Positions 1,109 through 54,308 are shown, counted from the stretch's first letter. The stretch: 64,000 nucleotides of DNA from Mobula birostris (GCF_030028105.1 NC_092379.1:28513821-28577820), one strand, 5' to 3'. Numbers and translations: made by a program. Notes: generated from the letters alone by a model not told the origin.

Positions 1109-1122
1109 CCGCCTTCTAGCGG
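1109..1122 (-). promoter_or_regulatory. CTCF-consensus motif 3' of V1
   Basis: Minus CCGCTAGAAGGCGG, 13/14 to CCRSYAGRKGGCRS; E-box-like CTTAAG-n5-CACGTA at 1045-1061. Confidence 0.55.
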
Positions 1123-1141
1123 TGGTTCACTGCATCACACC

Positions 1142-1482
1142 TGGCAACGATGTACTCGGCGGAGTCCGACACTGGAGCTCCAGAGATACTAAAATGGGCC
1201 ACCTTGCTGCCTCTCTTCAAAACAGCGGAAAACCACACTGGAGATCCTGGTATCCACTCCGTCTTTCCGGAGGTATATAACTTCACTATGCATCTTGGAG
1301 CTTCCCCGCGATAAGAAATGTAATAAAAAATGCAACCATGCCATTGTAACCTGAGTTCAGTCTTACAATCTGTCCTTCCTCAACCAATAATTCAGGAGAC
1401 TGCTGGGTCACTGTATCTTTCCCACTCGCTCCTGCAAGAAAAGGACAACCAACATAATCAACAAAGAGCTGAGGGAACACAT
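1142..1482 (-). pseudogene. TCR V pseudogene V1 (A-like); intron mostly deleted, frameshifted, RSS absent
   Basis: ATG at 1482 (MCSLSSLLIML) runs directly into acceptor TTGCAG; exon ASGKDTVTQQSPELLVEEGQIVRLNSGY; shifted frame gives ...HFSISGAPVSDSAEYIVAR; both canonical Cys lost; no heptamer/nonamer after the coding end. Confidence 0.85.
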
Positions 1483-1831
1483 GGTGTCTGACTTCCCACT
1501 GGAACTAAAAACAAATTACTTCTAGAAGGGTCATAACGTTGATCGTTATTGCAGATGAAGATCAGTCCCGCTATATCTTTCAGCTTGTGGATTTACCCTC
1601 TCAATCGGTTTATTGCTGGGAACAATAAATCTGGTTACAAATAGGGACTAGAATTTCTTCATTTCGTCTGTCTGTTGCAACTTGTCTTTATGACCTATTT
1701 TCTCTCAAACCTCAACCTCGCGGTGTCTCACCTAATTTCACCCATTTGAAATCTAATTTACTCCTTCCGAGGCAATCTACCTCTCTACCTCTCTCTACCT
1801 TTTCTTTCCCCCCTCTCTCTCTCTCTATCTT

Positions 1832-1874
<43 letters not shown>

Positions 1875-2613
1875 CACATACAACATCGTTCCCTGTCTCG
1901 CCCGTATTTATTTACCGACTCTCTCTTCAATTACACGTCTCTCACTCTAACTTTACCTTCCTTTACTCTTTGCAAAAGATTTAACTCCCTTTGCTTCTCA
2001 TTCCACTAACCTCCTCATTGCTTTCCTTCCTTTTCTCATTTTCTCTTCTTTGTCGTTCATTCCTTCCAGCTTCTCTTCTTTGTTTTTCTTCTCTCCATCT
2101 CGTTGCTTTCCTTCACCTTCTTTTTAGTTCCCATTTTGTTTCCTCCTATTCCGTCAGTGACGAATTTGCAAGATCTCATCACTCTCCACAGTTTTTCTTT
2201 TTATTTTCTTTCTTTTTAAACCCTTTTATTAATTGTTATTGAAAATGAAGAGCAAGAAAAAAATACATTTAAGTAATCAAGTCAACATATCAATATGTAC
2301 ACCAAGAGTTAAACTTTCAACCAAGTTAAACAATATATCAAGAATATTAAGGAAAAAACAAAATGTTAAAGCTATTTGTTTTTTTTTTGGTAAAAAGAAA
2401 GAAGGAAAAAGAACACCTACTAAAGAAAACAAAAAAAAAAACCTATCCAAAAAAAAAACACATTTGGAGCACAAACCCGGAGCTATACGTCATACCAGCT
2501 TCCAGAAAGGAAAAACATCAAACCAATAACCAAATCCCTCTCTTTTACCCAATTTGCTATTGCTTTCTCTATTTTGCTCTCTCTCCCACACACACACGTG
2601 CACACACACATTC

Positions 2614-2659
<46 letters not shown>

Positions 2660-2799
2660 ACTCTTCCTCTCTATCGGTCGTTAGCTCTGTGCCACATGCA
2701 AGTACACAGTTTGTATAATGATGGTTATACGACGTTGAAATTCGGAAGCAGTTTGTTCACTTGTTTTCCTGTTCTGTAAGGTGTGTGGAGACACTGCAA

Positions 2800-3272: not shown

Positions 3273-3994
3273 AATTTTGAGGTGGCTACCGAGTGGACCA
3301 AGCACACTTCTCCTGGAAAACGCAGCCGGGGTATTGAGACTTCGACAGGATTGAGAGACATTACCTTCAGAATTTGGGCTGAATAGAATGGAATCGGAAA
3401 TGGAAAGGTAGGCAACCTGCAACCAGATAGGGGACGGCTATCGGGACGCTGGGGGGATGGGTGTCGAAATCGGTTATCAAGAGGAGATCGGAGTAGGAGT
3501 GGAAAGAAAATAACTCTAAGGGGGTTGGAGCGGCTTGGACAGGAGTGATTTTCCGAGAGGATTTACGTTGATCTGAAAGAGAGTCAGGGAACGGGATTGC
3601 TGGAACATTTGAACATTGAGAAATAAAACTTAATAACGTAGCTTTGCAGGTGTAGTTCCTTCAGTTTGCATTTTGCCTCATTCTGCTGTTGGTGGAAGCC
3701 GGCAAGGTCCGACTCTCCCTTTATATCAAACTGCTACCCTCGTCTGTGCATCTTTTGGTCTTCCTCCCCTTCGAGTTCGAAACTGTAAGGAAATAAAGAA
3801 AAACAATAAACAACGTCTTTTCTGAGCATAGGAGTCGGGTGTTCAATCTTTTGTGCCCTAACGGTGTTATCTTCATAGGGCTCCGTCCTGGGAAGGTGTG
3901 AAGGTGCCTGAGTCTCGTGGCTGGGTCCACGTTGATGTCGAGGTTAGGCTGAGGCCACCCTCTGGTATCAGAGCTCACTGCAGTCAGGATATGA

Positions 3995-4310
3995 TTTTTT
4001 TGCCCAGATCCGCCTTCATCCCCAATCTCTGTGGGCTAATTTGCGCAAAGATGCAGCGCAGAAATCCACACTAGAACTCCAGAGATAGTTTCCAACTGGA
4101 AATCCGATATATTGACAGCTTTGTCTTCAGACCGAGCCACGTCAGCGAGGATGAACATTGTAAATAATTTTCTAAAGTTTCCATGATGTTGACTGTTCTA
4201 CAGATAGGCAAAGGCAGTTCCTGAGTAATTTCAGTGCAGCGACATTCTCTGTCCTTCCTAAATCAATAATTCCTTCCGATCCTTGCTCAACTTATCCGCC
4301 CCATTTGTAC
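3995..4310 (-). pseudogene. V pseudogene exon with 23-RSS; leader lost to a CR1 insertion
   Basis: GTNGADKLSKDRKELLI*EGQRMSLH*NYSGTAFAYL*...ISALHLCAN*; RSS CACAGAG-23-GCAAAAAAA at 3995-4033. Confidence 0.8.
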
Positions 4311-4319
4311 CCCAAAACA

Positions 4320-5790: not shown

Positions 5791-5940
5791 ACACCGTCAG
5801 TCCCGCAAGCAAAGCAGCTGTCCAACTAAATGAAAAATGTAGTCAGTAATTTCTCCCCTTCCCCTGGAGGTTTGCCTTCTTAAATCAATCACGTGACAAT
5901 GGTGGCTATGTGTTTGCGTCCCTGCTGTTTTCCGGCAAAG

Positions 5941-5955
5941 GGCTCCCTCTAGCGA
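5941..5955 (-). promoter_or_regulatory. CTCF-consensus motif 3' of A1 RSS
   Basis: Minus TCGCTAGAGGGAGCC, 23 nt beyond the nonamer; CACGTG at 5890-5895. Confidence 0.55.
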
Positions 5956-5978
5956 GCGCTCACTGTATCACGGAGGTC

Positions 5979-6017
5979 GGATTTTGTCTGGAGCCGTCAT
6001 CACCTTGCAACGCTGTG
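5979..6017 (-). other. 23-RSS of A1
   Basis: CACAGCG + 23 nt + ACAAAATCC. Confidence 0.92.
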
Positions 6018-6449
6018 GGTATCATGGCACAAAGATAAACGGCGGAGTCCGTCAAAAGAGCACCAGAGATGTTCAGATGGGCTGCTTCGCTGCCACGCTG
6101 CCAACCAGCGGTAATCCTCTCTGGACATTCAAGATGCCTTTCCATCTTGCCAGTGCTATATACCTTCAGCAAATATCTTGGAGATTCCACGCGATGCTGA
6201 ACATACCACAAAATATTTAGAGGATTGCCAGTGTAATTACAGTTCAGTCTTACACTTTGTGCTTCAGCAATTGTTAATTCAAGAGGCCACTGCGTCACCG
6301 AATCTTTCCCATTTGATCCTGCAATAAAAGGACAGAATGCATGAACAGTTTCGGCTTTCTTCATACATACGGAGCAGATATAGGCAGTTACCGCGAGACT
6401 CACCGGGCAGGATAGTCAATATAATCAGCGGATAACACAGAGAATTCAT
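6018..6449 (-). CDS. TCR alpha/delta-type V segment A1, apparently intact (leader 6404-6449, V exon 6018-6318)
   Basis: MNSLCYPLIILTILPG|SNGKDSVTQWPLELTIAEAQSVRLNCNYTGNPLNILWYVQHRVESPRYLLKVYSTGKMERHLECPERITAGWQRGSEAAHLNISGALLTDSAVYLCAMIP; GTGAG/TTGCAG 85-nt intron; C23, W41, C104 present. Confidence 0.9.
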
Positions 6450-11040: not shown

Positions 11041-11134
11041 CCGATGTAATTTGCTAGTGAGTTTCGCTCTCAGAAGTCAACCACGTGATTCTTACAAATA
11101 TTTGGGTGCGCCACTTCGACTTTTCTATCACGAC

Positions 11135-11148
11135 CCGCCCTCTAGCGA
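11135..11148 (-). promoter_or_regulatory. Orphan CTCF-consensus motif; V body deleted
   Basis: Minus TCGCTAGAGGGCGG; CACGTG at 11082-11087; homologous to the V1 3' flank. Confidence 0.6.
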
Positions 11149-11748
11149 CGGTTCACTGCATCACACCTCGCACAGACAGTATGTACTTTCAAAATAAATT
11201 CACTTTGAGCAATGACCATTTCTCACAGTCCGCGAATACAACAACAAAAATACAATTTGCATACGCTATCACGCTAAACATCCGCAGAATCTGTCGCATT
11301 ATCTGAATACTTAGTACAAATCATAATTAGCCACTACAACATCCTTAATTTCAGCAGCATGGCACTTGCTGTCTTTGTCAAACTAAAAACAACGAATTTG
11401 CCCACGTTCTGTCTTCCCTTAGTGAACCACTGTCCTATTTAAATACAAACAGTATATCGCAGGTCCACTCCGTCCTTATTACTTTTCTATGCCGAAGCTC
11501 GAACAATGTGACCAAAGACGACGTTATACTACGTTGACAATCGTGATATGCTTTTGCAGCAAAAAGGCGGGTAAATACTCATTGCTGTATCCAGGAAATA
11601 CATTATAAAGATCCAGTTTGGGTTTGCGTTGTAGTCATGAACCGTTCCATTACCTTCGCCGCTTTGTGTTGGTCAATGTAGCGTTCTTATGTAGGGCACC
11701 TGACCACGGCTGATTTCAGGGTGCGCCCTACTTTTTTTCCCGGCAAAA

Positions 11749-11763
11749 GACGTCCTCCAGTGA
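11749..11763 (-). promoter_or_regulatory. CTCF-like motif 3' of B1 RSS
   Basis: Minus TCACTGGAGGACGTC, 24 nt beyond the nonamer; E-box CACCTG at 11697-11702. Confidence 0.45.
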
Positions 11764-11787
11764 GACCTTTTTGCATTATACAGAACC

Positions 11788-11826
11788 AGTTTTTGTCCGG
11801 ACCCGCCGCCTTCAGGCAACAGCGTG
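11788..11826 (-). other. 23-RSS of B1
   Basis: CACGCTG + 23 nt + ACAAAAACT. Confidence 0.88.
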
Positions 11827-12257
11827 ATACTCATTGCACAGAGATAGATGCCAGTGTCCGTCACAAGAGCTTTAACGATATTCAGTTGAGCGGTCTTACT
11901 GCCTTTCTGCAAACTAGCGGTAAATGTCACTGGGGAATCAGGATGCCGCTCTATTCTTCCTGTGCTATACACCTTCAGCAAATACTTTGGAGATCCTGCA
12001 CTATGTTGAATGTACCAAAAGATATCTTCATCAGCAAAAGTGTAATTACAAATCATTGTTATGGTCTGCCCTTCCATAACAGTTACGTCGGGAGGGTTCT
12101 GCGTCACTGCATCTATCCCAGACGATCCTGCAAGAAAGGACGGAATACATTAACATCGTTAGCTTGTATTGAACACCGGAAAATTCGCGAGCCACCTTAG
12201 CAGAGACTCACCAGGCAGCACAGCCAATGAAATCAGTATCGAACAGAGGGAAATCAT
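11827..12257 (-). CDS. TCR alpha/delta-type V segment B1, apparently intact (leader 12212-12257, V exon 11827-12127)
   Basis: MISLCSILISLAVLPG|SSGIDAVTQNPPDVTVMEGQTITMICNYTFADEDIFWYIQHSAGSPKYLLKVYSTGRIERHPDSPVTFTASLQKGSKTAQLNIVKALVTDTGIYLCAMS; canonical splice sites, 84-nt intron. Confidence 0.9.
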
Positions 12258-13240: not shown

Positions 13241-13857
13241 ATCAAGGTCTTGTTAGCTATTTCTTTCGCTTTCTCTTGCTCTTTATTTACACATCCTCCC
13301 TTTCCATTTCTCATGTTCTGTCCATACCCTACATTCAATTTCACTTGCTTGCACTCTCTTTCCGCCCTGCCTCACCTTTCCTCTCTCTCTCATTCAACTG
13401 ATTGCTCACTCGACCACTACACCTTTCACTCATTCACTTCTTCATTGCTCTCTGCACCGCCATCGATCATTTACATTCCCTGAATTTCTATCGCTTTTTT
13501 TCTCTAGGTCTCTCTCTCCCTCATTCATCTCCGCCATTCCCCCTCAATTTCTACCACGTTATCCCCCTTTCTTAAAACCCAATCTAAACATAATGTACAT
13601 TATCCATCTTCCTCTCCTCGGCGGTCAATAAGAAATGATACGCCCCTGAAGACGGAAAGAAATAGGAAAGTCTTTGCTCGGTGGTTGTGAACGGCGGTTG
13701 GTGAAGGTGTTGAATCAATTCTCGCTTTGGCACTGAAGACTTAAGTAGGCCTGTCCAGAGAGGGTATATTTTTGCCAGTGTCCTCTAGATGGGCCTTATT
13801 GAATGTTGCCGGTGAGGCCTAGGGCGTCCCCTAGAGCTAGACGCCAGGGTGTTTTTT

Positions 13858-14303
13858 TTCTTTGGTCCAATCCCGCCGTCACCTTGTAACAGGATGGGCA
13901 GAAAGGCACAAGGATAAATGGTGGAAATTGGCAGAGTCTCGGAAATATTTAAATGATACTGTTGGCCTTTTTTTGTTCATCGAACCCGAAACCCTTAACG
14001 GAACGCCTTCAGACTGAACTGCATTTCCATTCCAGAATAGAATAAACAATATTATCAGAGATTTTCCAGAATTTTATCAGCTTCCGTCTAGCTGCATCTC
14101 AGTGACGTTGTCTCTCATTCATCGACCATTAATTCCCGCCGAACCTGAGTCACCGAGGTTCCCCACTTGTATCTGTTAAACCTGGCAGAGTGGGTCAGCG
14201 GAGCCGAATCGCACTGACCACGTAGGACAAGCGCTAATCGATTAAGTCGGGACACACCAGGGAGAGCAACCGTTAGGATCATCGACCAGCACAGGAGAAA
14301 CAT
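13858..14303 (-). pseudogene. V pseudogene D1 with leader, intron and decayed 23-RSS
   Basis: Leader MFLLCWSMILTVALPG (14258-14303), donor GTGTGT; exon SVTQVRRELMVDE*...SLRCS*...HLNISETLPISTIYPCAF; RSS CATCCTG-23-ACCAAAGAA at 13858-13896. Confidence 0.82.
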
Positions 14304-15425: not shown

Positions 15426-16168
15426 ATAATTTTGAGGTGCCTTACCCAGTGGACCAAGGACACTTCTCCTGGCAAAAGCAGCCGGAGTGCTGAGACTTCC
15501 ACAGGATTGAGAGACATTGCCTTTAGAATTTGGGCTGAATAGGATGGAATCAGAATAGGAAAGGTATGCAGCCTGCGACCAGATAGGGGACGGCTAGCGG
15601 GACGCTGGGGGGATGGGTGTCGAAATCGGTTATCAAGTGGAGATCGGAGTAGGAGTGGAAAGAAAATAGCTCGAAGGGGGTTGGAGCTTTTTGGACAGGA
15701 AGGATTTTCTGAGGGGAATTGCGTTGATCAGAAAGAGAGACAGGGAACGGCATTGCCGGAACATTTGAACATTGAGAAATAAAACTTAATAACGTAGTTT
15801 TGCAGGTACGCCATGGGAAAATACAGTGCAGTTCCTTCAGTTTGCATTTTGCCTCGTGCTGCTGTTGGTGGAAGCCGGCAAGGTCCGACTCTCCCTTTAT
15901 ATCAAACCGCTATCCTCGTCTGTGCATCTTTCGGTCTTCCTCCCCTTCGAGTTCGAAACTGTAAGCAAATAAAGAAAAGCAATAAACAACGTCTTTTCTG
16001 AGCATAGGAGTCGGGTGTTCAATCGTTTGTGCCCTAACGGTGTTATCTTCATAGGGCTCTGTCCTGGGAAGGTGTGAAGGTGCCTGGGTCTTGTGGCTGG
16101 GCTCACGTTGATGTGCAGGTTAGGCTGAGATCACCCTCTGGTATCAGAGTTCACTGCAGTCACGATAT

Positions 16169-16484
16169 ATTTTTTGTCCATATCCGCCTTCATCCCCAGT
16201 CTCTGTGGGCTAATTTGTGCATAGCTGCAGCGCAGAAATCCACACAAGAACTCCGGAGATAGTTTCCAACTGGAAATGCGAATACTTGACAGGGTTGTCT
16301 TTAGACCGAGCCATTTATGCGAGGATGAACATTGTAAATGATTTTCTAAAGTTTCCATGATGTTGACTGTTCTACAGGTAGGCAAAGGCAGTTCCTGAGT
16401 AATTTCAGTGCAGCGACATTTTCCGTCCTTCCTAAATCAATAATTCCTTCAGAATCTTGCTCAACTTATAGTCCCCATTCGTAC
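16169..16484 (-). pseudogene. V pseudogene exon with 23-RSS (copy of 3995-4310)
   Basis: Same three stop codons as copy 1; RSS CACAGAG-23-ACAAAAAAT at 16169-16207. Confidence 0.8.
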
Positions 16485-16499
16485 CTCTAAACATCTCAA

Positions 16500-18110: not shown

Positions 18111-18264
18111 GACGACCCAGTCAGTCCCGCAAGCAAAGCAGCGTTCCAAGTAACTGAAAAATGTAGTCAGTAATTTCTCCCCTTCCCCTGGAGGTTTGCC
18201 TTCTTAAGTCAATCACGTGACAGTGGTGGATATGTGTTTGCGCCCCGGCTGTTTTCCGGCAAAG

Positions 18265-18279
18265 GCCTCCCTCTAGCGA
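18265..18279 (-). promoter_or_regulatory. CTCF-consensus motif 3' of A2 RSS
   Basis: Minus TCGCTAGAGGGAGGC, 23 nt beyond the nonamer; CACGTG at 18214-18219. Confidence 0.55.
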
Positions 18280-18302
18280 GTGCTCACTGTATCACGGAGG
18301 TC

Positions 18303-18341
18303 GGATTTTGTCTCTAGCCGTCATCACCTTGCAACACTGTG
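18303..18341 (-). other. 23-RSS of A2
   Basis: Perfect CACAGTG + 23 nt + ACAAAATCC. Confidence 0.93.
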
Positions 18342-18773
18342 GGCAGCATGGCACAAAGATAAACAGCGGAGTCCGACACAAGAGTAGCAGAGATGTTCAA
18401 ATGGGCTGCCTTGCTGCCACGCTGCCAACCAGCGGTAAACCTCTCTGGACATTCAAGATGCCTTTCCATCTTGCTAGTGCTGTGTACCTTCAGCAAGTAT
18501 CTTGGAGATTCCACGCGATGCTGAACGTACCAAAAAATATTCAGAGGATCGCCAGTGTAATTACAGTTCAGTGTTACAATTTGTTCTTCAGCAATCGTTA
18601 ATTCAAGAAGCCACTGCGTCACCGAATCTTTACCATTTGATCCTGCAATAAAAGGACAGAATGCATGATCAGATCGGGATTTCTTCATACATACGGAACA
18701 AATATAGGCGGTTACCGCAGAGACTCACGGGCAGGATAGTCAATATAATCAGCAGATAACACAACGAATCCAT
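18342..18773 (-). pseudogene. V segment A2: open V exon (18342-18642) but 45-nt leader exon, so frameshifted on splicing
   Basis: Leader ends CTG CCC|GTGAG whereas A1 and A3 end CTG/ATG CCC G|GTGAG; V exon SNGKDSVTQWLLELTIAEEQIVTLNCNYT...YLCAML has no stop. Confidence 0.8.
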
Positions 18774-22800: not shown

Positions 22801-22884
22801 TTGCTAGTGAGTTTCGCTCTCAGAAGTCAACCACGTGATTCTTGCAAATATTTGGGTGCACCACTTCGGCTTTTCTATCACGAC

Positions 22885-22898
22885 CCGCCCTCTACCGG
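22885..22898 (-). promoter_or_regulatory. Orphan CTCF-consensus motif
   Basis: Minus CCGGTAGAGGGCGG, 14/14 to CCRSYAGRKGGCRS. Confidence 0.65.
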
Positions 22899-23532
22899 CG
22901 GTTCACTGCATCACACACCGCAGATACAGTATGTACTTTCAACATAAATTCACTTTGAACAATGACCATTTCTCACAGTCCGCGAATGCAACGACAAAAA
23001 TATAATTTGCATGCTCTATCACGCTAAACATCCGCAGGATCTGTCGCATTATCTGAATATTTAGCATAAATCATAATTAGCCACTGCAACATCCTTAATT
23101 TCAGCAGCATGGCACTTGCTGTCTTTGTCAAACTAAAAACAACGAATTTGTCCACGTTCTGTCTTCCCTTAGTCAACCACTGTCCTATTTAAATACAAAC
23201 AGTATATCGCAGGTCCACTCCGTCCTTATTACTTCTCTATGCCGAAGCTCGAACAATGTGACCAAACAAGACGACATAGTATGTTGCCAATCGTGATATG
23301 CCGTTGCAGCAAAGAAGGTGGGTAAATGCTCATTGCTGTATCCAGGAAATACATTATAAAGATCCAGTTTGGGTTTGCATTGTAGCCATGAACCGTTCCA
23401 TTACCTTCGCCGCCTTGTGTTGGTGATTGCAGCGCTCTTAAGCAGGGCCCGTGACCACGGCTGATTTCAGGGTGCGCCCTACCTTTTTTCCCGGCAAAAG
23501 ACGCCCTCCAGGGCGAGCGTTATACAGAACCG

Positions 23533-23571
23533 GTTTTTTGTCCGGACCAGCCGCCTTCAGGCAACAGCGTG
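23533..23571 (-). other. 23-RSS of B2
   Basis: CACGCTG + 23 nt + ACAAAAAAC. Confidence 0.85.
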
Positions 23572-24003
23572 ATATTCATTCCACAGAGATAGATGCCAGA
23601 GTCCGTCACAAGAGCTTTAACGATATTCAGTTGAGCCGTCTTGCTGTCTTTCTGCAAACTAGCGGTAAATGTCACTGAGCAATGAGGATGCCGTTCTATT
23701 CTTCCTGCGCTATACACCTTCAGCAAATACTTTGGAGATCCTGCACTATGTTGAATGTACCAAAAGATATCTTCACCAGCGTAAGTGTAATTACAAAGCA
23801 CTGTTATGGTCTGCCCTTCCTTAGCCGTTACGTCGGGAGGATCCTGCTACACTGAATGTTCCCCGGACGATCCTGCAAGAAAGGACCGAATACATTCACA
23901 TCGCTAGCTTGTATTGAACACCGGGAAAATTCGCAGCCCACCTTAGCAGAGACTCACCAGGCAGCACAGCCAAGGAAATCAGTAACGAACAGAGGGAAAT
24001 CAT
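23572..24003 (-). pseudogene. V segment B2 with one in-frame stop (leader 23958-24003, exon 23572-23872)
   Basis: GTG TAG CAG at 23847-23849 where B1 has GTG ACG CAG; rest open through ...DSGIYLCGMN. Confidence 0.88.
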
Positions 24004-26865: not shown

Positions 26866-27155
26866 CCCGGTTCCACTCCGTCCTCATTAATTCACGCTGC
26901 AAATAATTGAACAAAGTGACCAAAGGCAATGTCAGACAAGGCTGTCAATCGTGATATGCCGTTGCTGCAAAAGATGGTGGGTGATTGCACATTCCGGTAT
27001 CCCAGAAAGTCAGAAAGCTCAGTATTGGTCCGCGTTGTAATCAGGAACTGCTCCTTTAGCTTCGGTGCCTTCTGCTGCTGAATGCAGCGCTCTTAAGTAG
27101 GGCACGTGACTATAACTGACTTCTGGGTGCGCCCTCTGCAGATTCCTCGGAAAAA

Positions 27156-30784: not shown

Positions 30785-31196
30785 CTGTCCGCTTCTAAAT
30801 AACTAACTCTAATTCTAATGTATTTGTCGATCTCATACCTCTGTCCTTCGCTACACTTAATATGACACTTCATTTCCAGCAATGGATCGCCTACCTTGGT
30901 CCGTCTTTCATGACTCTCTTAAATGTTCGTCGCCGTGGCACGCTGTGCCTGTCCCTGTAGTCCAATCTAGTCCTGTTAACCACACAATAGTGTTATAGGC
31001 AACAGACACACAATATTGTTATGCACACTGAGATATACCGAAAAATGTCTCGGAAAAATGCAACATTAATATGGGAGAGCTGAATTCAAGAATTGTTCCT
31101 CAATGTTTGGCGCATTTTGCTGCTGAATGCAGCATTTCAAACCGAGCACGTGATCCTTATGCTTTGTGCGTGCGGCTGTTCCAGTCTCCCAGCTAA

Positions 31197-31211
31197 GGCG
31201 CCCTCTAGTGA
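31197..31211 (-). promoter_or_regulatory. CTCF-consensus motif 3' of C1
   Basis: Minus TCACTAGAGGGCGCC, 13/14 to consensus; CACGTG at 31147-31152. Confidence 0.65.
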
Positions 31212-31679
31212 TCACGAGTCCGGACCCACTGTGTCCCTGCAATTCTGTAGGGCGCATTGCACAGTGGTATACGCCAGAGTCTGGAACATGAACTCCAGAT
31301 ATATATAAATGAGCTGAATCTGCCTCTGTGTATATCAGCTGAAAATCTCGCCGAACATTCTGGAGGTTGCTGCAGTGTTCTTGAATAATATACCTTCAGC
31401 ATTTATTTTTCGAGATATTCTGCGATACGGATTGTATCAAAAATATTTGCACTAGTTCTTGTGTAATTGCAGTTTAGTGTTATGAGCTGACATTCGTCAG
31501 CCGTTAATTTGGTAGCATACTGGATCACTGAACCTTTCTCTCTCGTTCCTGTATTAAAGGAGAAAATGCACTAATATCCCGGACTTGCACTGAACTCACT
31601 TGACACTCTCTCGTCATATGTGCAGCGTCCTGCCTGTCAGGATGACGAATGTAATGAATACGAAAGAAAGGGAGCACAT
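31211..31679 (-). pseudogene. V pseudogene C1 (leader 31634-31679, exon ~31250-31548)
   Basis: MCSLSFVFITFVILTG with GC donor; SVIQYATKLTADECQLITLNCNYT; frameshifts at W41 and in FR3; ...DSGVYHCAM; RSS decayed (TACAGAA-23-ACTCGTGAT). Confidence 0.85.
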
Positions 31680-37910: not shown

Positions 37911-38053
37911 TCAACCCGCAAGCAAAGCAGCTGTCCAACTAACTGAAAACTGTAGTCAGTAATTTTTCCCCTTTCCCCTGGAGTTTCCCTGCTTAAGCCA
38001 ATCACGTGACAGTGGTGGCTATGTGTTTGCGCCCCGGCTGTTTACCGGCAAAG

Positions 38054-38068
38054 GGCTCCCTCTACCGA
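38054..38068 (-). promoter_or_regulatory. CTCF-consensus motif 3' of A3 RSS
   Basis: Minus TCGGTAGAGGGAGCC, 23 nt beyond the nonamer; CACGTG at 38003-38008. Confidence 0.55.
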
Positions 38069-38091
38069 GCGCTCACTGCATCACGAAGGAC

Positions 38092-38130
38092 GGATTTTGT
38101 CTTGAGCCGTCATCGCCTTGCAACACTGTG
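38092..38130 (-). other. 23-RSS of A3
   Basis: CACAGTG + 23 nt + ACAAAATCC. Confidence 0.93.
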
Positions 38131-38553
38131 GGCATCATGGCACAAAGATAAACGGCGGAGTCCGACACAAGAGCACCAGGAATGTTCAAATGGGCTGCCT
38201 TGCTGTCACGCTGCCAACCAGCGGTAAATCTCGCTGGATTCCGGTCCATCTTCCCAGTGCTATATACCGTCAGCAAATATCTTGGAGATTCCACGCGATG
38301 CTGAACGTACCAAACGATAGAATAAGGATTGCCAGTGTAATTACACTTCAGTGTTACAATTTGTTCTTCCGTAATCGTTAATTCAAGAGGCCATTGCGTC
38401 ACCGAATCTTTCCCATTTGTTCCTGCAATAAAAGGACAGAATGTATGAACAGATCGGGATTTCTTCCACATACGGAACAGATCTAGGCCGTTATCGCGGA
38501 GACTCACCGGGCATCATAGTCAATATAATCAGCAGATAACACAGAGAATTCAT
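38131..38553 (-). CDS. TCR alpha/delta-type V segment A3, apparently intact (leader 38508-38553, V exon 38131-38422)
   Basis: MNSLCYLLIILTMMPG|TNGKDSVTQWPLELTITEEQIVTLKCNYTGNPYSIVWYVQHRVESPRYLLTVYSTGKMDRNPARFTAGWQRDSKAAHLNIPGALVSDSAVYLCAMMP; exon 9 nt shorter than A1/A2. Confidence 0.9.
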
Positions 38554-42840: not shown

Positions 42841-42943
42841 AAACCTTCACCGATGTAGTTTGCCACTGACTTTCACTCTCATAAGTCAACCACGTGATTC
42901 TTGCAAATATTTGGGTGCGCCACTTCGACTTTTCTATCACGAC

Positions 42944-42957
42944 CCGCCCTCTAGCGA
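42944..42957 (-). promoter_or_regulatory. Orphan CTCF-consensus motif
   Basis: Minus TCGCTAGAGGGCGG. Confidence 0.6.
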
Positions 42958-43588
42958 CGGTTCACTGTATCACACCTCGCACGTAAAGTATGTACTTTAA
43001 ACATAAATGCACTTTGAAAAAATGATGATTTCTCACAGCCCTGTAATGCAACGACCAAAATACTATATGCATTCTCCATCACGCTAATTATCCGCAGGGT
43101 CTGTCGCATTATCTAAATACTCAGTATAAATCATAAGCTGCCACTGTAACAGTCTTAATTTCAGCAGCATGTCACCTGCTGTTCTTTGTCTAACTAAAAA
43201 CAACGATTTGCCCACGCTGTGTTTTCCCTTAGTGAACTATTGCCCTACCTAAATATATTGCAGTTCCACTCCGTCCTTATTACTTCTCCATGCAGAACCT
43301 CCAACAATGTGACCAAAGAAGACGTCATACTAGGTTGCCATTCGCAATATGCCGTTGCAGCAAAGAGGATGGGTGAATGCACATTGCCGTATCCCGAAAA
43401 TACATTATAAAGATCCAGTCTGGGTGTACGTTGTAGTCATGAACTGTTCCATTACCTTCGGCGCCTTGTGTTCGTGATTGCTGCCATCTTAAGTAGGGCA
43501 CGTCACCACGACTGTTTTCAGTGTGCGCACTCCCAATTTACCGGCAAAAGACGCCGTCCAGTGAGAGCTTTTTACTTTATACAGAACC

Positions 43589-44100
43589 AATTTTTGTTCG
43601 AGACCCGCCGTCTTCATGCAACAAGTAGGACTCATTGCACAGAAATAGATGCTAGAGTCCGACACAAGGGCTTTAACGATATTCAATTGAGCAGACTTGC
43701 TGTCTTTGTATAGGGGTATAATCCAAAGTCCGGGACAAGAATTCGAGAGATACCGAAATGAACTGACTCTGCGTTTGTGCAGAACAGCTGTCAACCTCGC
43801 CGGACATTCTGAGTCCACGCCAGTTTTCCTCATCATAGAGCTTCAGCAGTTTTTAGGAGATTATCCGCGATGTTTGTCTTAGTTCGTGTGTAACTGCATT
43901 TCAGTGCTATCATCTAACTTCCGTCAGCCGATAATTCAGGAGCATCCTGATCACAGAATTGTACTTTCTCGTTCCTGCAATAAAGGACAGAATGGAGTGA
44001 TTTCCCTGACTTGCACTGAACTACGCTCTCGCTGGTCCTGTGTGCAGCGTCTTAGCTGTCAGGATGACGAATAAAACCTATAAGAATCTGAGGGACACAT
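43589..44100 (-). pseudogene. Chimeric V pseudogene: C-type leader and V exon fused to the 3' third of a B-type V
   Basis: C-type ...VHFGISRILVPDFGLYPY joined at GTCTTTGTA (43702-43710) to B-type KDSKSAQLNIVKALVSDSSIYFCAMS; heptamer destroyed, nonamer ACAAAAATT; leader 45 nt with CTAAG donor. Confidence 0.82.
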
Positions 44101-45225: not shown

Positions 45226-46439
45226 CGGCAACATCGTACATTGAATAAAGTAACCAGAGAATGATTTGAAGATATTTCTCCAATAAAAAGAGAAGTTATT
45301 CACGTAAGGACAAGCAGAGACTTTCCGGGCAACTCGGCGCTTTCATTTAAAAGTATATGCGGATTTTACTTCTAAATGCAGGGTTGATGCCAGCCACAGG
45401 ACGGTCTGGCGTTAATTGACTCACCTCTCCCTGCACCGCTCCCCACCCCCTTCGTCTCCATCACCGTCTGACTTCCCTCTCTCTCCATCTCTTTGTGTTA
45501 GTCCATCACTTTTGACTCCGCATCTCCAATTATCCGCCGAATCGTCTCCCTCCGTATCTCTCTCACTCACTCTCACTTTCAAGTGGATCTGAAGGAGTTT
45601 ATTTTTGCATTCTTTTAGTGTTTCACTTTGTACTACCTCGATAAGCTGTTTAATTAATGCATCTGTTAAATCGCAGTCAATGCAATCATCCGACAAGAAT
45701 AAAAAACATATCCAGCAAAATGCCCCACGTGGTGATAACATCAGATCCGTTAAATCTGTTTGGGAAACCAGATGATACAAGCTATCACTCTGTTGTGCTC
45801 CCATTCCCTCTCTCCCTCTCTCGCTCTCTTTTCTACTGAAAATGGCTTCAGAATATAAGTATATGGGTAGTATGCGGTCAAGTAATGTACTTTAATCATA
45901 AAGTTATTTTGAACATTGTACCTCTTACGCTATCACGCTAAACATTGGCAGGTTCTGTCGCATTATCTAAATACTCAGTATAAAAACAATGTTGATTTTG
46001 CAACATCCTTAATATCGGTAGCATACCACTTGTAAATCTTTGTCAATCCGAAGACCACTATTTTTCCCACCTGTGTTTTCCTTCTGTCAGCAATTGTCCT
46101 ATTTAAATATATGCCGCTTCCATTCTCATTATTTCTCCGTGCAGACACCAGAACAAAGTGTCCACAGACCATGTCACGCAGTGTTGTGAATCGTGGTATG
46201 CAATTGCAGCAAACGAGGTTGCGTAAAAGAACATTGTAGTACCCCGGAAATGCATTTTAAAGTTCCAGTTTCGTTGCGCATTGCAATCAGGAACTGCTCC
46301 TTTAGATTCGGCGCCTTGTGCTGCTGATTTCGGCGCTCTTGAGTAGGGCACGTGACCATGGCTGATTTCTATGTGCGCTCCTTCCAATTTCCCGGATAAA
46401 GGCGCCCTCCATTGCGAACTTTTTTTGCATTATACGGAA

Positions 46440-46871
46440 CCAGTTTTATACAGATACAGATACATGCCAGTATTCGACACAAGAGCTCAAACCAAATGTA
46501 ATTAAGCCGTCTAGTTGTCCTTCTGCAACTGCGGTAAATCTCACTGGGCAATCCAGATGCCGCTCCATTATTGTTATGCGATATGACTACAGCAAGTAAT
46601 TTGGCGATTCTCCACAATGTTGAATATGCAAAAAGATATTTGCATCAACTTCAGTGGAATTACATTTCAGTGTTATGTTCTGTCCTTTCTCAGCCGTTAT
46701 GTTGGATGATCCCATGTCACTGAGACTTTCCCGCGCTTTCCTGAAATAAAGGACACAGTAAGTAAACATCGCTGTCTTGTATTGACCGCAGGAGAAATTC
46801 GCTGGCCACCTTCGCAGAGACTCACCGGGCGGCACAGCGAATGTAATCCGTAATGAACAGAGGGAAAGCAT
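46440..46871 (-). pseudogene. V pseudogene B5; heptamer and spacer deleted
   Basis: Leader MLSLCSLRITFAVPPG (46826-46871); NITAEKGQNITLKCNSTEVDANIFLHIQH...NYLL*; ends TATCTGTATCTGTATAAAACTGG; CTCF-like GGCGCCCTCCATTGC at 46401-46415. Confidence 0.85.
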
Positions 46872-50170: not shown

Positions 50171-50430
50171 ATGTTTAATCCCTCGAGGTAGTGAAAAATG
50201 AAATCAAGCAAAAAAAAAATTACCACAAGATATTCTTAGAGGCAACAGAGCGACATAGACACCACCATATAGTAGAAATTCTTCGGAAAGCCGCCACAGT
50301 ATCCCTAGGCAAATCTAACTTCAAGCGGCGTTCCACAAGTTTGTCACATTTTGTTGCTGAATGCGGCATTTCAAATCGACCGCGTGATTTTCTGCTTTCT
50401 GCGTACAGCTGTTCCAGTTCCCCAGCAAAA

Positions 50431-50445
50431 GGCGCCCTCTAGTAA
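50431..50445 (-). promoter_or_regulatory. CTCF-consensus motif 3' of C3
   Basis: Minus TTACTAGAGGGCGCC. Confidence 0.55.
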
Positions 50446-50457
50446 TTACGCAACGCT

Positions 50458-50921
50458 GGACTTTGTACAGACCCGTTGTTTCCCTACAATACTGAGGGTC
50501 CTTTGTACAGAGGTACTGTATACACCTGAGTCCGGGACAAGAATTCCAGAGATACTTGAATGAGCTGACTCTGCGTCTGTGCATTACAACTGTAAAGCTC
50601 GTCCGACATTCTGAGGCCGCTGCAGTTTTCCTCAGCCATAGAGCTTCAGCAGGTTTTAGGACATTCTCCGCGATGCTCAGTGTATCAGATATTTTTGCTT
50701 TAGCCCATGTGCAACTGCATTTCAGTGTTATTATCTGACTTCCGTCAGCCGATAATTTAGGAGCATGCTGATGACAGATTTGAACTTCCTCGTTCATGCA
50801 ATAAAGGACAGAATGCAGTGACTTCCCTGACTGGCACCGAACTACGCTCTCGCTGGACACGTGTGCAGTATCTTAGCAGTCAGGATGGCGAATGAAAATT
50901 GTAAGAAACTGAGGGACACAT
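50458..50921 (-). pseudogene. V pseudogene C3
   Basis: 45-nt leader, donor CTAAG, acceptor CAT; KLSADGSQIITLKCSCT...YLCTK; RSS CTCAGTA-23-ACAAAGTCC at 50458-50496. Confidence 0.82.
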
Positions 50922-51114
50922 GTTCACTCGCTTCAGCCCCGATAGGATCGCAAATCACTTACACGAATTAACAACATGACAGATAATTGAGAGTAAAACG
51001 TATCAGAAGAAGACTGAAAGGTGCAATGCTCAACGATTGCAAAATAAAACCAGAACAAAGGCTATATGAGAACTCGTCAGAATCCAGTTACGTTGAAACC
51101 CCCATGTTGCTTTT

Positions 51115-51243
51115 NNNNNNNNNNNNNNNNNNNNNNNNNNNNNNNNNNNNNNNNNNNNNNNNNNNNNNNNNNNNNNNNNNNNNNNNNNNNNNNNNNNNNN
51201 NNNNNNNNNNNNNNNNNNNNNNNNNNNNNNNNNNNNNNNNNNN
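51115..51243. other. N run, 129 nt
   Basis: Same position in the block as 44291-44420. Confidence 0.98.
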
Positions 51244-51729
51244 CCCTCTCCCCACTCTACCTCTCTCCATTTATCTTTTTATCTATCGTTCTCTCTTTAT
51301 CTTCGTCTCTCTTTCTCACTCTTTTGCTCTATCCCTACCTACTTCTCTCTCTCGTTCTTACTCCGGATATTGATTTCTATTTTACTGTTTATCTACATGT
51401 TTGAACGTTCTAACAACTCACTCTCGCTTTCTTTGCCATTCTGCCCCTGCTCTATACTTTTTCACACCATGTCACCCCATGCTAGCCAGCGTATCCGCGA
51501 CGATTCCTCCGAGTCATCCGCAAAGTTATGACTTTCCGCTGCTGCTGTTATTTAACTTAATATTAGCCTTTTAAGTTATTGACGGAACACCTTTCAATCT
51601 TCCAGAACCCCGTTGGATAATTCTTGTCAATAGCACATCAAATATCTATTCCCAGGTACGAGCTGGGATTAAATGTTTAACGGACATGGAAGGCTCCGGA
51701 AAGAGCAGGCAAACATTGCGAACACTGAG

Positions 51730-52175
51730 GTGTCCAGATCCTGTATCGCCGTGGAACGTTGGTGCTGAACTGCGCAAAGTTATTCAGTAGATTCCGGCAC
51801 GATTCCCTGGAACTTATTTAAGCGGAACAGCTTTGCCCAGAGACCCGAAATATTACTGGACCGTCTTCGCGTAGAACAATATCTCCTGTCATGAATATTT
51901 TCATCGGTTTTCCAGAATAGTGAACGCACGACAAACAGGTTCTGCCAGATTCCAACTGACTGAAGCTAAGTGACACGGTTTCCCCTTCCACCGTCATTAA
52001 ATCTGTCGTTCTGAGGTTCACAAAATCTGCCTCACTCATCCCTGTATCAAACCCCGAAGGTGTGAGGGGCGCCTGAACGCAGTGACCTTGGAGGGCACGC
52101 TCTAACTGCCTCGCCAGATTCACCAAACAGAGTAGTAACTACAAAGTACATCGCAGCGGGAACATGGTGATTGGA
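51730..52175 (-). pseudogene. V fossil E2
   Basis: GMSEADFVNLRTTDLMTVEGETVSLSFSQ...GIVPESTE*LCAVQ; paralog of E1. Confidence 0.65.
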
Positions 52176-52559
52176 ATAAAATAAACAGAGGAAGATTTGA
52201 AGATGTTACTCCGATAAAACAGAAGTTACTCAAATAAGTACAAGAGACTTTCCGGGAGACTCGGCGCTTTCGTGTCGATGTACATTCGTCTCCCTTCTCT
52301 CTTCCTATGTTCCAATGGGAGAATTTACTGCCGATCACCTGTCGGGGATATTGCAATTAGAAGAATGCTTGACTGTAACATCGATACAGCGACTGCTGTC
52401 TCCTCTCTCGCTTTCGAACAAACCATATCAGACTCTCCCTTATTAGCGTGAGAGAGAGAATGCCTGCGGGACTACGAAATGTTGCAGTAAACAGCTATTT
52501 TTTACTGTACTGCAGGCCAAGCCTCTCCTTGAATCTTTACGGTGACTTCGACGGTGGTT

Positions 52560-52960
52560 GGTGGTGGAAATGCTGATGCATTATATTACAATGAGTGAGT
52601 GAAGTAGAAGCGAGTTAGGTTAATGCTGCCGGCCGCTGATTTTGCGAGAGATGTGGCAGTGGGCGTTCAGCTACTTAGCTTTTTTTTTTTTTTACCGAAG
52701 TTGGTGCTTTGGGTTTTTGTTCTGTATTAAGGATATCTGTGGAGACTATGTATTTCAGGTTATGTATTGTGTCCATTCTCTGATTTTAAACGTGACTGTT
52801 TAAGCATACTGGGCGTTCTTTTCGCAGTACTCTGTTATATCTGACAACAGCAAAATATAAAATAAACTTAAACCAGTTTGGGGTAACTGTAAGCGTCTGC
52901 AAAGTGAAGGGATACATCAGGCTGTCTTTCGTTAGTTCATAAAATATCGGTTGAGCGGGG
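52560..52960 (-). pseudogene. Probable V fossil family H, copy
   Basis: Colinear with 24630-25000. Confidence 0.35.
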
Positions 52961-54308
52961 AGGTGGAGGTAGTTGTGTACTGCAGAGCGCCTATCTTGGC
53001 ACCCTGGCGATATTTGGTGTTATTTCACCATGGATCCGGTTGGATTCCGATAATTTCGATGCTGTCAGCAAATACTTCCGTGCTCAGTTTCCAAATTTTG
53101 CGCGTTACCAAGTATTACACTGCCCGCAGAAGACTTTCTGGGCAGCATGTGCTCGTGATCGGAGGATCACTGTGTGTGCACGTTAAGAGGAATGTGCGAC
53201 ATTTGGGCCCAAAATCAGTTGACCATAAGACCATAAGCAGACGTTGCCTCTCTCTGTCTCTTCAATCGTGAGGTGATTCAAAGTTCTAAAAGAAGCAATA
53301 GATTAATTCGTTTGCAAAAGTATTGAACGGTAGGATGAAATTGAATCCCAATCCCGTCCTGCTCGGTATGACCTTGCTCTTTAATTCCTGCCCGCGCTGC
53401 ATTTTTGTACTGCTGTTACAATATGTTTTTGCATTATTTTATTGTTTATCTTTGCACTACCTCCATCAAGGGTGTATTGAATTCATCTGTAAAAACCGAA
53501 TCAAGGCAATCATGTGACAATAATAAACAAATTCCTATCCAATTTACATATGCAGCGAACTTCACCTGGAGATAAAATTAGATCAGTTAAATCTTGTTGG
53601 GAAACTAGATTATGCAAGCAAGCAACCTGTTGTGATCCCATCCCTCTCTCTCCCTCGCTCTCTTTTACGCTGAAAATGCCTACAAAAATATGAATCTCGG
53701 AGTAGTAGGCGATCACGTATATGTAGTTCAAACATAAATTCACTTTAAGTATTGAACCTCTTTCTCAAAGCAACGACCAAATTAGTATCTGCATTCTCTA
53801 TCACGCCAAGCATCCGCTGGTTGTGTCGCATCATCTAAATTCTCAAAATAATCAATAAGTAGTTTTTCCCAACATCCTGACTTTCATTAACGTGCCACTT
53901 GCAATTCTTCATCAATCGGAAAACCACAAATTTTCTCACCATCTGGTGTCCTTTAGTCAGCCATTGTGCCATTTAATTATCTCCCGGATCCACTCCGTTC
54001 TCACTATTTCTCACTGCAGACACGCAAACAAAGGGCCATAAGACAATGTCAGACAAGGGTCTCAATGGGGATATGCCGTTGCAGCAACAGAGCGTGGGTG
54101 AATGCACATTCCGATATCCCGGAAAGTTGTGTAGTTGCATTTTGGGTCCGCGTTGTAATCAACAACTGTTCGTTTAGATTCGGCGTCTTGTGCTGCTGAT
54201 TACAGCGGTCTTATGTAGGATACGTGACCATGGCTAACGGGTGCGCCCCTTCGAGTTTCGTCGCAAATCGACGGCCTCCAGAGAAAGCTTCTAGCATTAT
54301 ACAGGACC

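What the first reader, a model, noticed from the sequence alone, without database searches (positions are those of the whole stretch)
1109..54284. Co-oriented CTCF-consensus motif at a fixed distance 3' of nearly every V RSS
Seen: a CTCF-like 14-15-mer lies beyond the nonamer of almost every V, always in the same orientation: 5941, 18265, 38054 (A, 23 nt away); 11749, 27156, 43550, 54270 (B, 24 nt); 23500, 46401, 31197, 50431, 13823, 3953, 1109 (spacing altered by local indels). Best examples are TCACTAGAGGGCGCC (31197) and TCACTGGAGGGCGCC (27156). It is shared by families whose surrounding flanks have otherwise diverged. Established: CTCF-binding elements just 3' of D-proximal mouse VH RSSs promote V accessibility during cohesin/RAG scanning. 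Inference: this fish TCR V array uses an RSS-coupled CTCF cassette, pointing to an ancient loop-extrusion mode of V choice. I am not aware of it being described here but cannot search the literature.
Basis: partly seen in the sequence, partly recalled or inferred. Interest (0 to 1): 0.85.

Follow-up and report, generated by a model that had tools for sequence, protein, structure and literature searches.

The report
CTCF-like sites behind skate TCR V signals
In this skate-type T-cell-receptor alpha/delta V-gene array, nearly every V segment has a same-direction CTCF-type motif about 24 bases past its recombination signal. This layout is known from mouse antibody heavy-chain V genes. Here it looks limited to skates and their relatives rather than ancient, and CTCF binding is untested.

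Summary
Observation confirmed. The window holds 15 TRAV-like V segments on the minus strand; only 5 have intact reading frames. All 14 listed places carry the 15-mer on the V sense strand, and so does V06. Three V-less relic copies of the same ~110-nt cassette carry it too.

Where the RSS survives, the motif starts 23-25 nt past the nonamer in 9 Vs and 12-26 nt in 4.

Between V families the motif is the best-conserved 15-column block of the V-end-plus-flank alignment: identity 0.68, against a flank mean of 0.34. That is higher than FR3 coding and the RSS.

Motif quality is uneven. Four Vs score about 0. The two best sites sit at pseudogenes.

Other little-skate V families (3 of 3) and one unidentified, probably batoid, contig have strong sites (16.9-18.3) at the same spacing. 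There the flanks are otherwise different.

No such site was found behind about 5 bamboo-shark Vs, 1 shark-like V, 17 bonefish Vs or 12 frog Vs. The "ancient" inference is therefore not supported for TRAV.

CTCF binding is untested. The scan's first readers noted the same layout in other windows of this genome, including TCR-beta arrays.

The parts
1108..1125 (-). CTCF-like motif of V01 cassette (PWM 15.8)
1143..1447 (-). V01, pseudogene (stops and frameshift), RSS missing; V end joins directly to the cassette
3952..3970 (-). motif of V02 cassette (PWM 7.0)
4000..4311 (-). V02, pseudogene
5940..5958 (-). motif of V03 cassette (PWM 10.6), 23 nt past nonamer
5979..6298 (-). V03 (family A), intact V exon plus 23-RSS (CACAGCG-23-ACAAAATCC)
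11133..11151 (-). motif of V-less relic cassette R1 (PWM 10.7), V01-type flank
11748..11766 (-). motif of V04 cassette (PWM -0.9), 24 nt past nonamer
11788..12107 (-). V04 (family B1), intact V exon plus 23-RSS
13822..13840 (-). motif of V05 cassette (PWM 11.2)
13860..14156 (-). V05, decayed pseudogene with defective heptamer (approximate limits)
16160..16485 (-). V06, pseudogene, paralogue of V02 (approximate limits)
18264..18282 (-). motif of V07 cassette (PWM 8.3), 23 nt past nonamer
18303..18622 (-). V07 (family A), intact V exon plus 23-RSS
22883..22901 (-). motif of relic cassette R2 (PWM 14.8)
23499..23517 (-). motif of V08 cassette (PWM -0.7), 18 nt past nonamer
23533..23852 (-). V08 (family B1), pseudogene (stop in FR1) plus 23-RSS
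27155..27173 (-). motif of V09 cassette (PWM 9.1), 24 nt past nonamer
27195..27514 (-). V09 (family B2), intact V exon plus 23-RSS
31196..31214 (-). motif of V10 cassette (PWM 17.4, best in window)
31222..31558 (-). V10 (family C), pseudogene, heptamer defective and nonamer lost
38053..38071 (-). motif of V11 cassette (PWM 9.95), 23 nt past nonamer
38092..38402 (-). V11 (family A), intact V exon plus 23-RSS
42942..42960 (-). motif of relic cassette R3 (PWM 10.7)
43549..43567 (-). motif of V12 cassette (PWM -0.2), 24 nt past nonamer
43575..44036 (-). V12, pseudogene (B1-like 3' part, C-like 5' part; approximate limits)
46400..46418 (-). motif of V13 cassette (PWM 5.0)
46430..46706 (-). V13, pseudogene with truncated 3' end and no heptamer (approximate limits)
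50430..50448 (-). motif of V14 cassette (PWM 7.2)
50460..50860 (-). V14 (family C), pseudogene with defective RSS (approximate limits)
54269..54287 (-). motif of V15 cassette (PWM -0.7), 24 nt past nonamer
54309..54628 (-). V15 (family B2), pseudogene (stops) plus 23-RSS

Best explanation
Each V segment of this skate-type TCR alpha/delta V array carries an RSS-coupled CTCF-binding element (CBE) on its sense strand. The CTCF core starts about 23-25 nt past the nonamer of the 23-RSS. It heads a ~110-nt conserved cassette, which in half the copies also holds a TCACGTG E-box about 45 nt further on.

Inferred mechanism, by analogy with mouse proximal VH CBEs: CTCF bound in this orientation presents its N-terminus toward the J-C side. 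There it stalls cohesin that is extruding V-region chromatin past a J-based recombination centre. The adjacent V RSS is then held at RAG for longer and its use rises. The co-oriented sites, about one per 3 kb, also shape the folding of the array.

Shown here: presence, position, single orientation, excess conservation between families, and recurrence in other skate V families.

Inferred: CTCF occupancy, cohesin stalling, the effect on V choice, and the direction toward J-C (no J or C lies in the window).

On present sampling the layout is a feature of skates or batoids, not a pan-vertebrate TRAV feature.
For: Motif and position:
- 18 copies, all on the V sense strand.
- Minus-strand PWM hits of 8 or more: 24 against 7.0 +/- 2.9 expected, with no excess on the plus strand.

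Selection:
- The motif is the top 15-column block in between-family identity, at 0.68. The flank is 0.34, FR3 0.51 and the RSS 0.32-0.34.
- Family-weighted information content per position correlates with that of the CTCF matrix (r = 0.55, p = 0.015).

Independent copies:
- Little-skate scaffold L001, from other V families with good RSSs, scores 17.4, 16.9 and 17.4 at 21-28 nt past the nonamer (19-mer start; that is 24-31 nt to the 15-mer start).
- L006/L008 scores 18.3 with its 15-mer starting 25 nt past the nonamer, plus a second site of 14.5.
- The L006 core (TCAGCAGATGGCGCC) differs from the window's best (TCACTAGAGGGCGCC) only at degenerate positions of CCASYAGRKGGCRS.
- A cassette HMM matches L001 only marginally (E 0.004-0.5; one copy over the core region alone, two over about 100 nt at ~14 bits), so most of the flank there is not conserved.

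Literature:
- The skate uses the canonical CTCF motif with an orientation bias at TAD boundaries (MA0139.1, threshold 8; PMC10115646).
- Mouse proximal VH genes have CBEs just 3' of the RSS that promote V use (PMC7930373, 10.1101/2020.01.01.891473, PMC5859386).
- CTCF ZF8-11 contact 18 bp on the 5' side of the core (PMC10484683). A 23-25 nt gap would therefore put the protein's edge about 5-7 bp from the nonamer (inference).
Against: - Motif quality is uneven. V04, V08, V12 and V15 score about 0; V02, V06, V13 and V14 score 4.7-7.2. Family A has 3 mismatches to the IUPAC core.
- The skate consensus has T at matrix position 4 and no preference at position 6, both informative positions in mammals.
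- The information-content correlation is equally high at a +3 shift.
- Within families the motif is no better conserved than its flank, 0.85 against about 0.80. In B1 it is 0.82 against 0.84, and in D 0.87 against 0.94. Constraint may be relaxed or absent now in some lineages.
- The best motifs sit at pseudogenes (V10, V01, V05) and V-less relics. The intact V04 has a poor one. This does not fit a simple 'CBE serves its own V' model, and it is unlike mouse, where proximal VH pseudogenes lack CBEs (PMC7930373).
- There are no binding data.
Confidence: 0.55

Rival explanations
1. The cassette is a conserved regulatory module read by other factors. It could be a small promoter or enhancer for germline or antisense transcription, or a barrier element using the class-B E-box TCACGTG (USF/TFE type) and the GCGCAC and CCGGAA-like blocks. 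On this reading the CTCF resemblance of its first block is incidental or secondary.
For: - Several blocks besides the motif are conserved between families: GCGCAC(CC), TCACGTG and CTTAAG.
- TCACGTG occurs 14 times against 5.2 expected. Nine of its 11 distinct sites lie in cassettes, about 45 nt past the motif.
- Many copies are poor CTCF matches.
- The cassette persists at dead Vs and V-less relics.
Against: - Only the CTCF-like block is shared with the L001 and L006 V flanks. The E-box and the other blocks are absent there.
- The motif block is clearly the most conserved of all.
- Its variation across lineages follows the degenerate positions of the CTCF core.
- I know of no other factor with this 12-14-nt specificity. 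That rests on memory; no motif-database comparison could be run.
Confidence: 0.2
2. The motif has no function. It is carried along by tandem duplication and gene conversion of V units from one ancestral flank that happened to contain a CTCF-like word.
For: - All Vs in the window are paralogues whose flanks align for more than 250 nt.
- Within families the motif is no better conserved than the flank.
- It has decayed in B1, V15 and family D.
Against: - Between families it is conserved twice as well as the flank, and better than FR3 coding or the RSS.
- It survives with scores of 16.9-18.3 behind V families that share about 50% or less protein identity and whose flanks are otherwise mostly unalignable.
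- Gene conversion would homogenise whole flanks, not one 15-mer.
Confidence: 0.15
3. The element is tied to RAG biochemistry rather than to loop extrusion. It would be an extended signal-flank element at a fixed distance from the nonamer, acting for example through nucleosome positioning, handling of the RAG/HMGB1 post-cleavage complex, or signal-end processing.
For: - The 23-25 nt spacing from the nonamer is kept across families whose intervening sequence differs.
- A heptamer-like (T/G)RCAGTG block lies between the nonamer and the motif in families A, D and E, in the relics and in L001b.
Against: - Copies keep the motif after the RSS has been lost (V01, V10, R1-R3).
- Spacing varies from 12 to 31 nt in other copies.
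- TRAV RSSs of shark, bonefish and frog work without it.
Confidence: 0.07

Closest known systems
RSS-associated CTCF-binding elements of mouse D-proximal VH segments (7183, Q52 and related families; VH81X-CBE)
   Same: A CBE lies within 100 bp 3' of a V 23-RSS, and all sites share one orientation relative to the V (PMC5859386 Table 2; PMC7930373; 10.1101/2020.01.01.891473 extended-data legend). By analogy the function would be to stall extrusion and raise use of the adjacent V.
   Different: - The locus is TCR alpha/delta-type, not Igh.
- The animal is a skate-type cartilaginous fish.
- The site is part of a ~110-nt composite cassette.
- The strongest motifs sit at pseudogenes and V-less relics, whereas mouse proximal VH pseudogenes lack CBEs (PMC7930373).
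- Many copies are weak matches.
- Binding and function are untested.
CBEs of the mouse Tcra-Tcrd V region
   Same: The locus type is the same. Most mouse sites (129 of 144) also point one way, toward J-C (PMC5859386).
   Different: Mouse sites are mostly upstream of V promoters or intergenic, not behind the RSS (PMC5859386 Table 2). In this window no comparable promoter-side sites were seen apart from weak hits at 4379 and 16553.
PAIR elements of the distal mouse VH region
   Same: A repeated composite element in a V array that combines a CTCF site with other factor sites (PMC7930373).
   Different: PAIRs are intergenic, bind Pax5 and E2A, and drive antisense transcripts. Here the element abuts the RSS, the E-box is of the CACGTG class, and no transcription data exist.
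Chicken beta-globin 5'HS4-type compound insulator (CTCF site plus USF E-box); recalled from memory, not checked here
   Same: A CTCF-like core and a CACGTG-type E-box lie within about 60 nt of each other in 9 of 18 cassettes.
   Different: This is only a resemblance in motif content. The E-box is absent from the L001 and L006 copies, and no barrier or enhancer-blocking data exist.

Membership tests
V-RSS-associated CTCF-binding element (mouse proximal-VH type) | Sequence matches the CTCF core matrix at a usual threshold (MA0139.1, score 8 or more, as used for skate in PMC10115646) | tested here: inconclusive
   Seven of 15 V-linked copies and all 3 relics score 8 or more (17.4, 15.8, 11.2, 10.6, 9.95, 9.1, 8.3; relics 10.7, 14.8, 10.7). 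Four score 4.7-7.2 and four about 0. Outside the window, 4 of 4 skate-type copies score 16.9-18.3.
V-RSS-associated CTCF-binding element (mouse proximal-VH type) | Lies within about 100 bp 3' of the V RSS | tested here: met
   The 15-mer starts 12-26 nt past the nonamer in the 13 Vs that keep one, and 23-25 nt in 9 of them. L001: 24 and 31 nt. L006: 25 nt.
V-RSS-associated CTCF-binding element (mouse proximal-VH type) | All sites in one orientation relative to the V segments | tested here: met
   All 18 copies are on the V sense strand. The excess of PWM hits is on that strand only.
V-RSS-associated CTCF-binding element (mouse proximal-VH type) | Orientation convergent with CBEs on the D/J-C side | not testable with these tools
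   No J, C or recombination-centre sequence lies in the window. By the convergent rule a sense-strand motif points downstream of the V (inference).
V-RSS-associated CTCF-binding element (mouse proximal-VH type) | Occupied by CTCF and cohesin in lymphocyte precursors | not testable with these tools
   Needs ChIP-seq or CUT&RUN in skate thymus.
V-RSS-associated CTCF-binding element (mouse proximal-VH type) | Raises use of the adjacent V during RAG scanning | not testable with these tools
   Needs repertoire data or mutagenesis.
V-RSS-associated CTCF-binding element (mouse proximal-VH type) | Paired with recombining Vs and missing at neighbouring pseudogenes (PMC7930373) | tested here: not met
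   Intact Vs score 10.6, -0.9, 8.3, 9.1 and 9.95. Pseudogenes V10, V01 and V05 score 17.4, 15.8 and 11.2, and V-less relics 10.7-14.8.
PAIR element | Intergenic repeat with CTCF, E2A and Pax5 sites and antisense transcription | tested here: not met
   The element abuts the RSS. The E-box is TCACGTG, not CAGCTG or CACCTG, except for CAGGTG in V04. Pax5 sites and transcription were not assessed.

The most novel reading that the evidence does not exclude
RSS-CBE coupling is a general organising principle of antigen-receptor V arrays in skates and rays, covering TCR alpha/delta here and, by unverified scan notes, TCR beta as well. It forms a dense one-way comb of cohesin brakes, about one per 3 kb, that is kept even where the V has died. 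It would either have arisen independently of the mammalian Igh arrangement (convergence on the same solution) or descend from an ancestral RSS-plus-CBE unit lost from TRAV in sharks, bony fish and tetrapods.
Probability: 0.2. Interest if true: 0.85.

Novelty: new variant of a known kind. Interest (0 to 1): 0.6.

Why it matters
RSS-adjacent CBEs are the best-understood link between loop extrusion and V-gene choice, but they are known mainly from mouse and human Igh. Finding the same arrangement in a TCR alpha/delta array of a cartilaginous fish matters for two reasons. Mammals place these sites at V promoters in that locus. TRAV flanks of a shark, a teleost and a frog lack them. If the skate sites bind CTCF, the coupling is either very old and repeatedly lost, or a solution that evolution found more than once.

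It also gives a natural series of strong, weak and dead motifs next to intact and dead Vs. That series could be used to test how much a CBE contributes to V usage. The little skate already has Hi-C and ATAC resources (PMC10115646), so the question is directly testable.

Tried and rejected
- Word-indexed protein searches with a window V and with the skate protein P0001 found almost nothing. The exhaustive profile search was what gave relatives.
- Contig look-ups failed for horn shark, for two proteins that resemble elephant-shark (chimaera) TRAVs and come from one unidentified assembly, and for one that resembles a horn-shark V. Each failed because the file or the gene range was too large. Chimaeras and other sharks and rays therefore remain untested.
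- The species behind SRR17051962/3 and ERZ27276711 could not be identified.
- I considered that the (T/G)RCAGTG block between nonamer and core is the canonical CTCF upstream motif read by ZF9-11. By my own alignment that motif, as I recall it, spans positions -17 to -9, anchored on the contacts the structure paper reports at -9 to -12 (PMC10484683). The block here lies about 5-6 nt closer to the core, so I rejected it as a standard U motif.
- I considered E2F for GGCGCC followed by T's. The T-run is on the wrong side, so I rejected it (from memory).
- CpG observed/expected of the cassettes (0.86) is not distinct from background (0.76; 95th percentile 1.37). There is no evidence for a CpG-island-like state.
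- Rfam and tRNA scans of the window found nothing, so the cassette is not a known RNA or a tRNA-derived SINE.
- A cassette HMM found no copies away from V flanks, apart from the relics and one decayed V remnant, so it is not a dispersed repeat.
- Jain et al. 2018 (Cell) is not held in the library. Mouse facts are cited from reviews and preprints.

Full report
**What is in the window.**
- The region from 1.1 to 54.7 kb is a tandem array of 15 V segments, all on the minus strand (tblastn).
- They are V-set domains (Pfam PF07686, E 3e-13). A profile of five of them hits TCR alpha chains first in the PDB.
- The closest protein in an exhaustive search of 1.8 billion representatives comes from the little skate, Leucoraja erinacea. 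After it come anuran, lizard, teleost, bamboo-shark and chimaera TRAV-like models.
- The window is therefore a skate-type TRA/TRD V array. Species identity was not proven.
- Only V03, V04, V07, V09 and V11 have open V exons with a plausible 23-RSS. The other ten are pseudogenes.

**The observation.**
- An HMM of the ~110 nt that begin at the motif finds exactly 18 copies in the window: the 15 V flanks and three V-less copies (R1-R3, motifs at 11133, 22883 and 42942). It also finds one weak hit that turned out to be a decayed 16th V remnant at about 61.8 kb.
- R1-R3 are homologous to the 3' flank of V01 for about 440 nt at 69-70% identity. The homology starts about 20 nt before the motif, and no V body lies in front.
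- Where a nonamer survives, the 15-mer starts 23 nt (family A), 24 nt (V04, V09, V12, V15) or 25 nt (V02, V06) after it. In the indel-bearing copies the distance is 12-26 nt.
- The four N runs are at least 386 nt from any cassette. I did not try to fill them.

**Is it more than chance, and more than paralogy?**
It reproduces the known consensus TGGCCACCAGGGGGCGCTA.
- With it the minus strand has 24 hits of 8 or more, against 7.0 +/- 2.9 in 200 dinucleotide shuffles. The plus strand has 5 against 6.2.
- Tool-run shuffles agree. CTRGAGGGNGNC with up to 1 mismatch gives 22 against 4.65. CCASYAGRKGGCRS with up to 2 mismatches gives 15 against 7.5.
- The copies are paralogues, so counts alone prove little. 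I aligned V 3' ends plus 260 nt of flank and scored identity only between families (seven groups, each group pair weighted equally).
- The motif is the single best 15-column window of the whole alignment, at 0.68. The best FR3 window is 0.66, the 3' flank mean 0.34 (sd 0.10), the heptamer 0.34 and the nonamer 0.32.
- Within families the motif is no better kept than the flank: 0.85 against about 0.80. In B1 it is 0.82 against 0.84 and in D 0.87 against 0.94; only family C stands out, at 0.93 against 0.59.
- The extra constraint is therefore a long-term signal. It may be relaxed now in some lineages.

**How CTCF-like is it?**
- PWM scores at the homologous register:

| Copies | PWM score |
|---|---|
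| V10 | 17.4 |
| V01 | 15.8 |
| V05 | 11.2 |
| V03 | 10.6 |
| V11 | 9.95 |
| V09 | 9.1 |
| V07 | 8.3 |
| V14 | 7.2 |
| V02 | 7.0 |
| V13 | 5.0 |
| V06 | 4.7 |
| V04, V08, V12, V15 | about -1 to 0 |
| R1, R2, R3 | 10.7, 14.8, 10.7 |

- The little-skate genome paper used this matrix at threshold 8. It found the usual orientation bias of CTCF motifs at skate TAD boundaries (PMC10115646). So the mammalian matrix is a fair yardstick here.
- Across 11 family-level lineages the skate consensus is C-g-a-T-C-a-C-T-A-G-A-G-G-G-C-G-C-C.
- Its information profile correlates with that of the matrix (r = 0.55, p = 0.015), though a +3 shift does as well.
- It departs from the matrix at positions 4 (T, not C) and 6 (no preference).
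- Family B copies fail mainly through A-to-G at the strongly weighted position 9.

**Related sequences elsewhere.** I fetched DNA around relatives found by the profile search. For each V I located the RSS and scanned 200 nt beyond the nonamer on both strands.

| Source | Vs examined | Result |
|---|---|---|
| Little-skate scaffold L001 (about 53% protein identity or less to the window's Vs) | 3 intact-looking Vs | 17.4, 16.9, 17.4; 19-mer starts 21-28 nt past the nonamer, sense strand |
| Logan contigs L006/L008 (species unknown; V end aligns at 71% to an L001 V) | 1 | 18.3, 15-mer 25 nt past the nonamer, plus a second site of 14.5 |
| Bamboo shark L002/L005 | about 5 | none |
| Shark-like contig L007 | 1 | none |
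| Bonefish L003 | 17 | none |
| Spadefoot toad L004 | 12 | none |

- The L006 core differs from the window's best copy only at degenerate positions of the CTCF consensus.
- The cassette HMM matches L001 only marginally (E 0.004-0.5): one copy over the core region alone, the other two over about 100 nt at ~14 bits. Most of the flank is not conserved there.
- In the last four sources the best score is 4.7. For the sharks nothing appears within 1 kb, apart from weak hits inside V exons.
- The coupling therefore holds across skate-type TRAV families. It was not found in the other vertebrates sampled. The shark sample is small, and chimaera and other rays could not be fetched.

**Comparison with what is known.**
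[quoted passage not shown] - Proximal VH CBEs promote use of the attached V and impede further scanning. Pseudogenes there lack them, and repairing one turned a pseudogene into the most-used VH (PMC7930373, 10.1101/2020.01.01.891473).
- The skate array copies the Igh-proximal layout in a locus where mammals use another layout.
- It differs in keeping its best motifs at dead Vs and V-less relics.
- Structures show CTCF ZF8-11 covering 18 bp on the 5' side of the core (PMC10484683). A 23-25 nt gap would leave only about 5-7 bp between the protein and the nonamer. This is my inference.
- Full-text searches of the held library found no paper on CTCF sites in antigen-receptor loci of cartilaginous fish.

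**Other features of the cassette.**
- Between families in the window, further blocks are conserved: GCGCAC(CC), TCACGTG and CTTAAG.
- TCACGTG occurs 14 times against 5.2 expected. Nine of its 11 distinct sites are in cassettes, about 45 nt past the motif.
- These blocks are missing from L001 and L006, so they are family-specific additions. They keep open a rival reading in which other factors act.

**Verdict.**
- The reading as an RSS-coupled CTCF element is the best available (0.55), but binding is untested and many copies are weak.
- The claim of an ancient origin is not supported for TRAV by the sample I could reach.
- First-reader notes of this scan report the same layout in other windows of this genome: 502 kb before this window, 90 kb and 314 kb after it, and in TCR-beta arrays on other pieces. 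Two follow-up reports cover TCR beta. I did not check those.

Noticed in passing
window 1105-1165 and 11152-11175, 22902-22925, 42961-42985: V01 has no RSS: its V end runs straight into the segment that normally lies between nonamer and motif. The three V-less relic cassettes R1-R3 share V01's flank from almost the same breakpoint (about 20 nt before the motif), at 69-70% identity over about 440 nt. The RSS-less flank was therefore itself duplicated, as part of the B1 unit, about 610 bp behind V04, V08 and V12.
   Followed up: partly
window 61768-61870 (minus strand): Decayed remnant of a 16th V: a YxC-like end, the nonamer ACAAAAACA at 61814-61822, and a degenerate motif CAGCGGAGGGCC (PWM about -1) followed by TTTTGCC.
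   Followed up: partly
window 10477-10645 / 22238-22403 and 44291-44420 / 51115-51243: The four N runs fall at equivalent positions of paralogous units: about 1.1 kb behind V04 and V08, and about 255 nt upstream of the C-like 5' parts of V12 and V14. They lie next to pyrimidine-rich simple sequence. I did not fill them.
   Followed up: partly
window: between nonamer and motif in V01, V02, V03, V06, V07, V11 and R1-R3; also L001:3490-3505: A conserved GTGAT(A/G)CAGTGA(A/G)C block, heptamer-like (ACAGTG), lies 3-17 nt before the core. It resembles the CTCF upstream motif as I recall it (TGCAGTNCC) but sits about 5-6 nt too close to the core. It is absent from family B.
   Followed up: partly
window 5890-5896, 11082-11088, 18214-18220, 22832-22838, 27103-27109, 31147-31153, 38003-38009, 42891-42897, 46349-46355: A TCACGTG (class-B E-box) lies about 45 nt past the motif in 9 of 18 cassettes. 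V04 has CAGGTG at the same place. The factor is unknown.
   Followed up: partly
window 49537-50170; L001 five copies: An interspersed repeat of about 630 bp is shared with the little-skate scaffold at 77-88% identity. The ORF at 49488-49775 and the zf-RVT hit at 13003-13344 suggest retroelement debris between the Vs.
   Followed up: no
L006:747-765 (and L008:754-772): A second, same-strand CTCF-like site (TGACCAGAAGGTGGCCATG, PWM 14.5) starts 28 nt after the start of the first. This makes a tandem pair behind one V.
   Followed up: no
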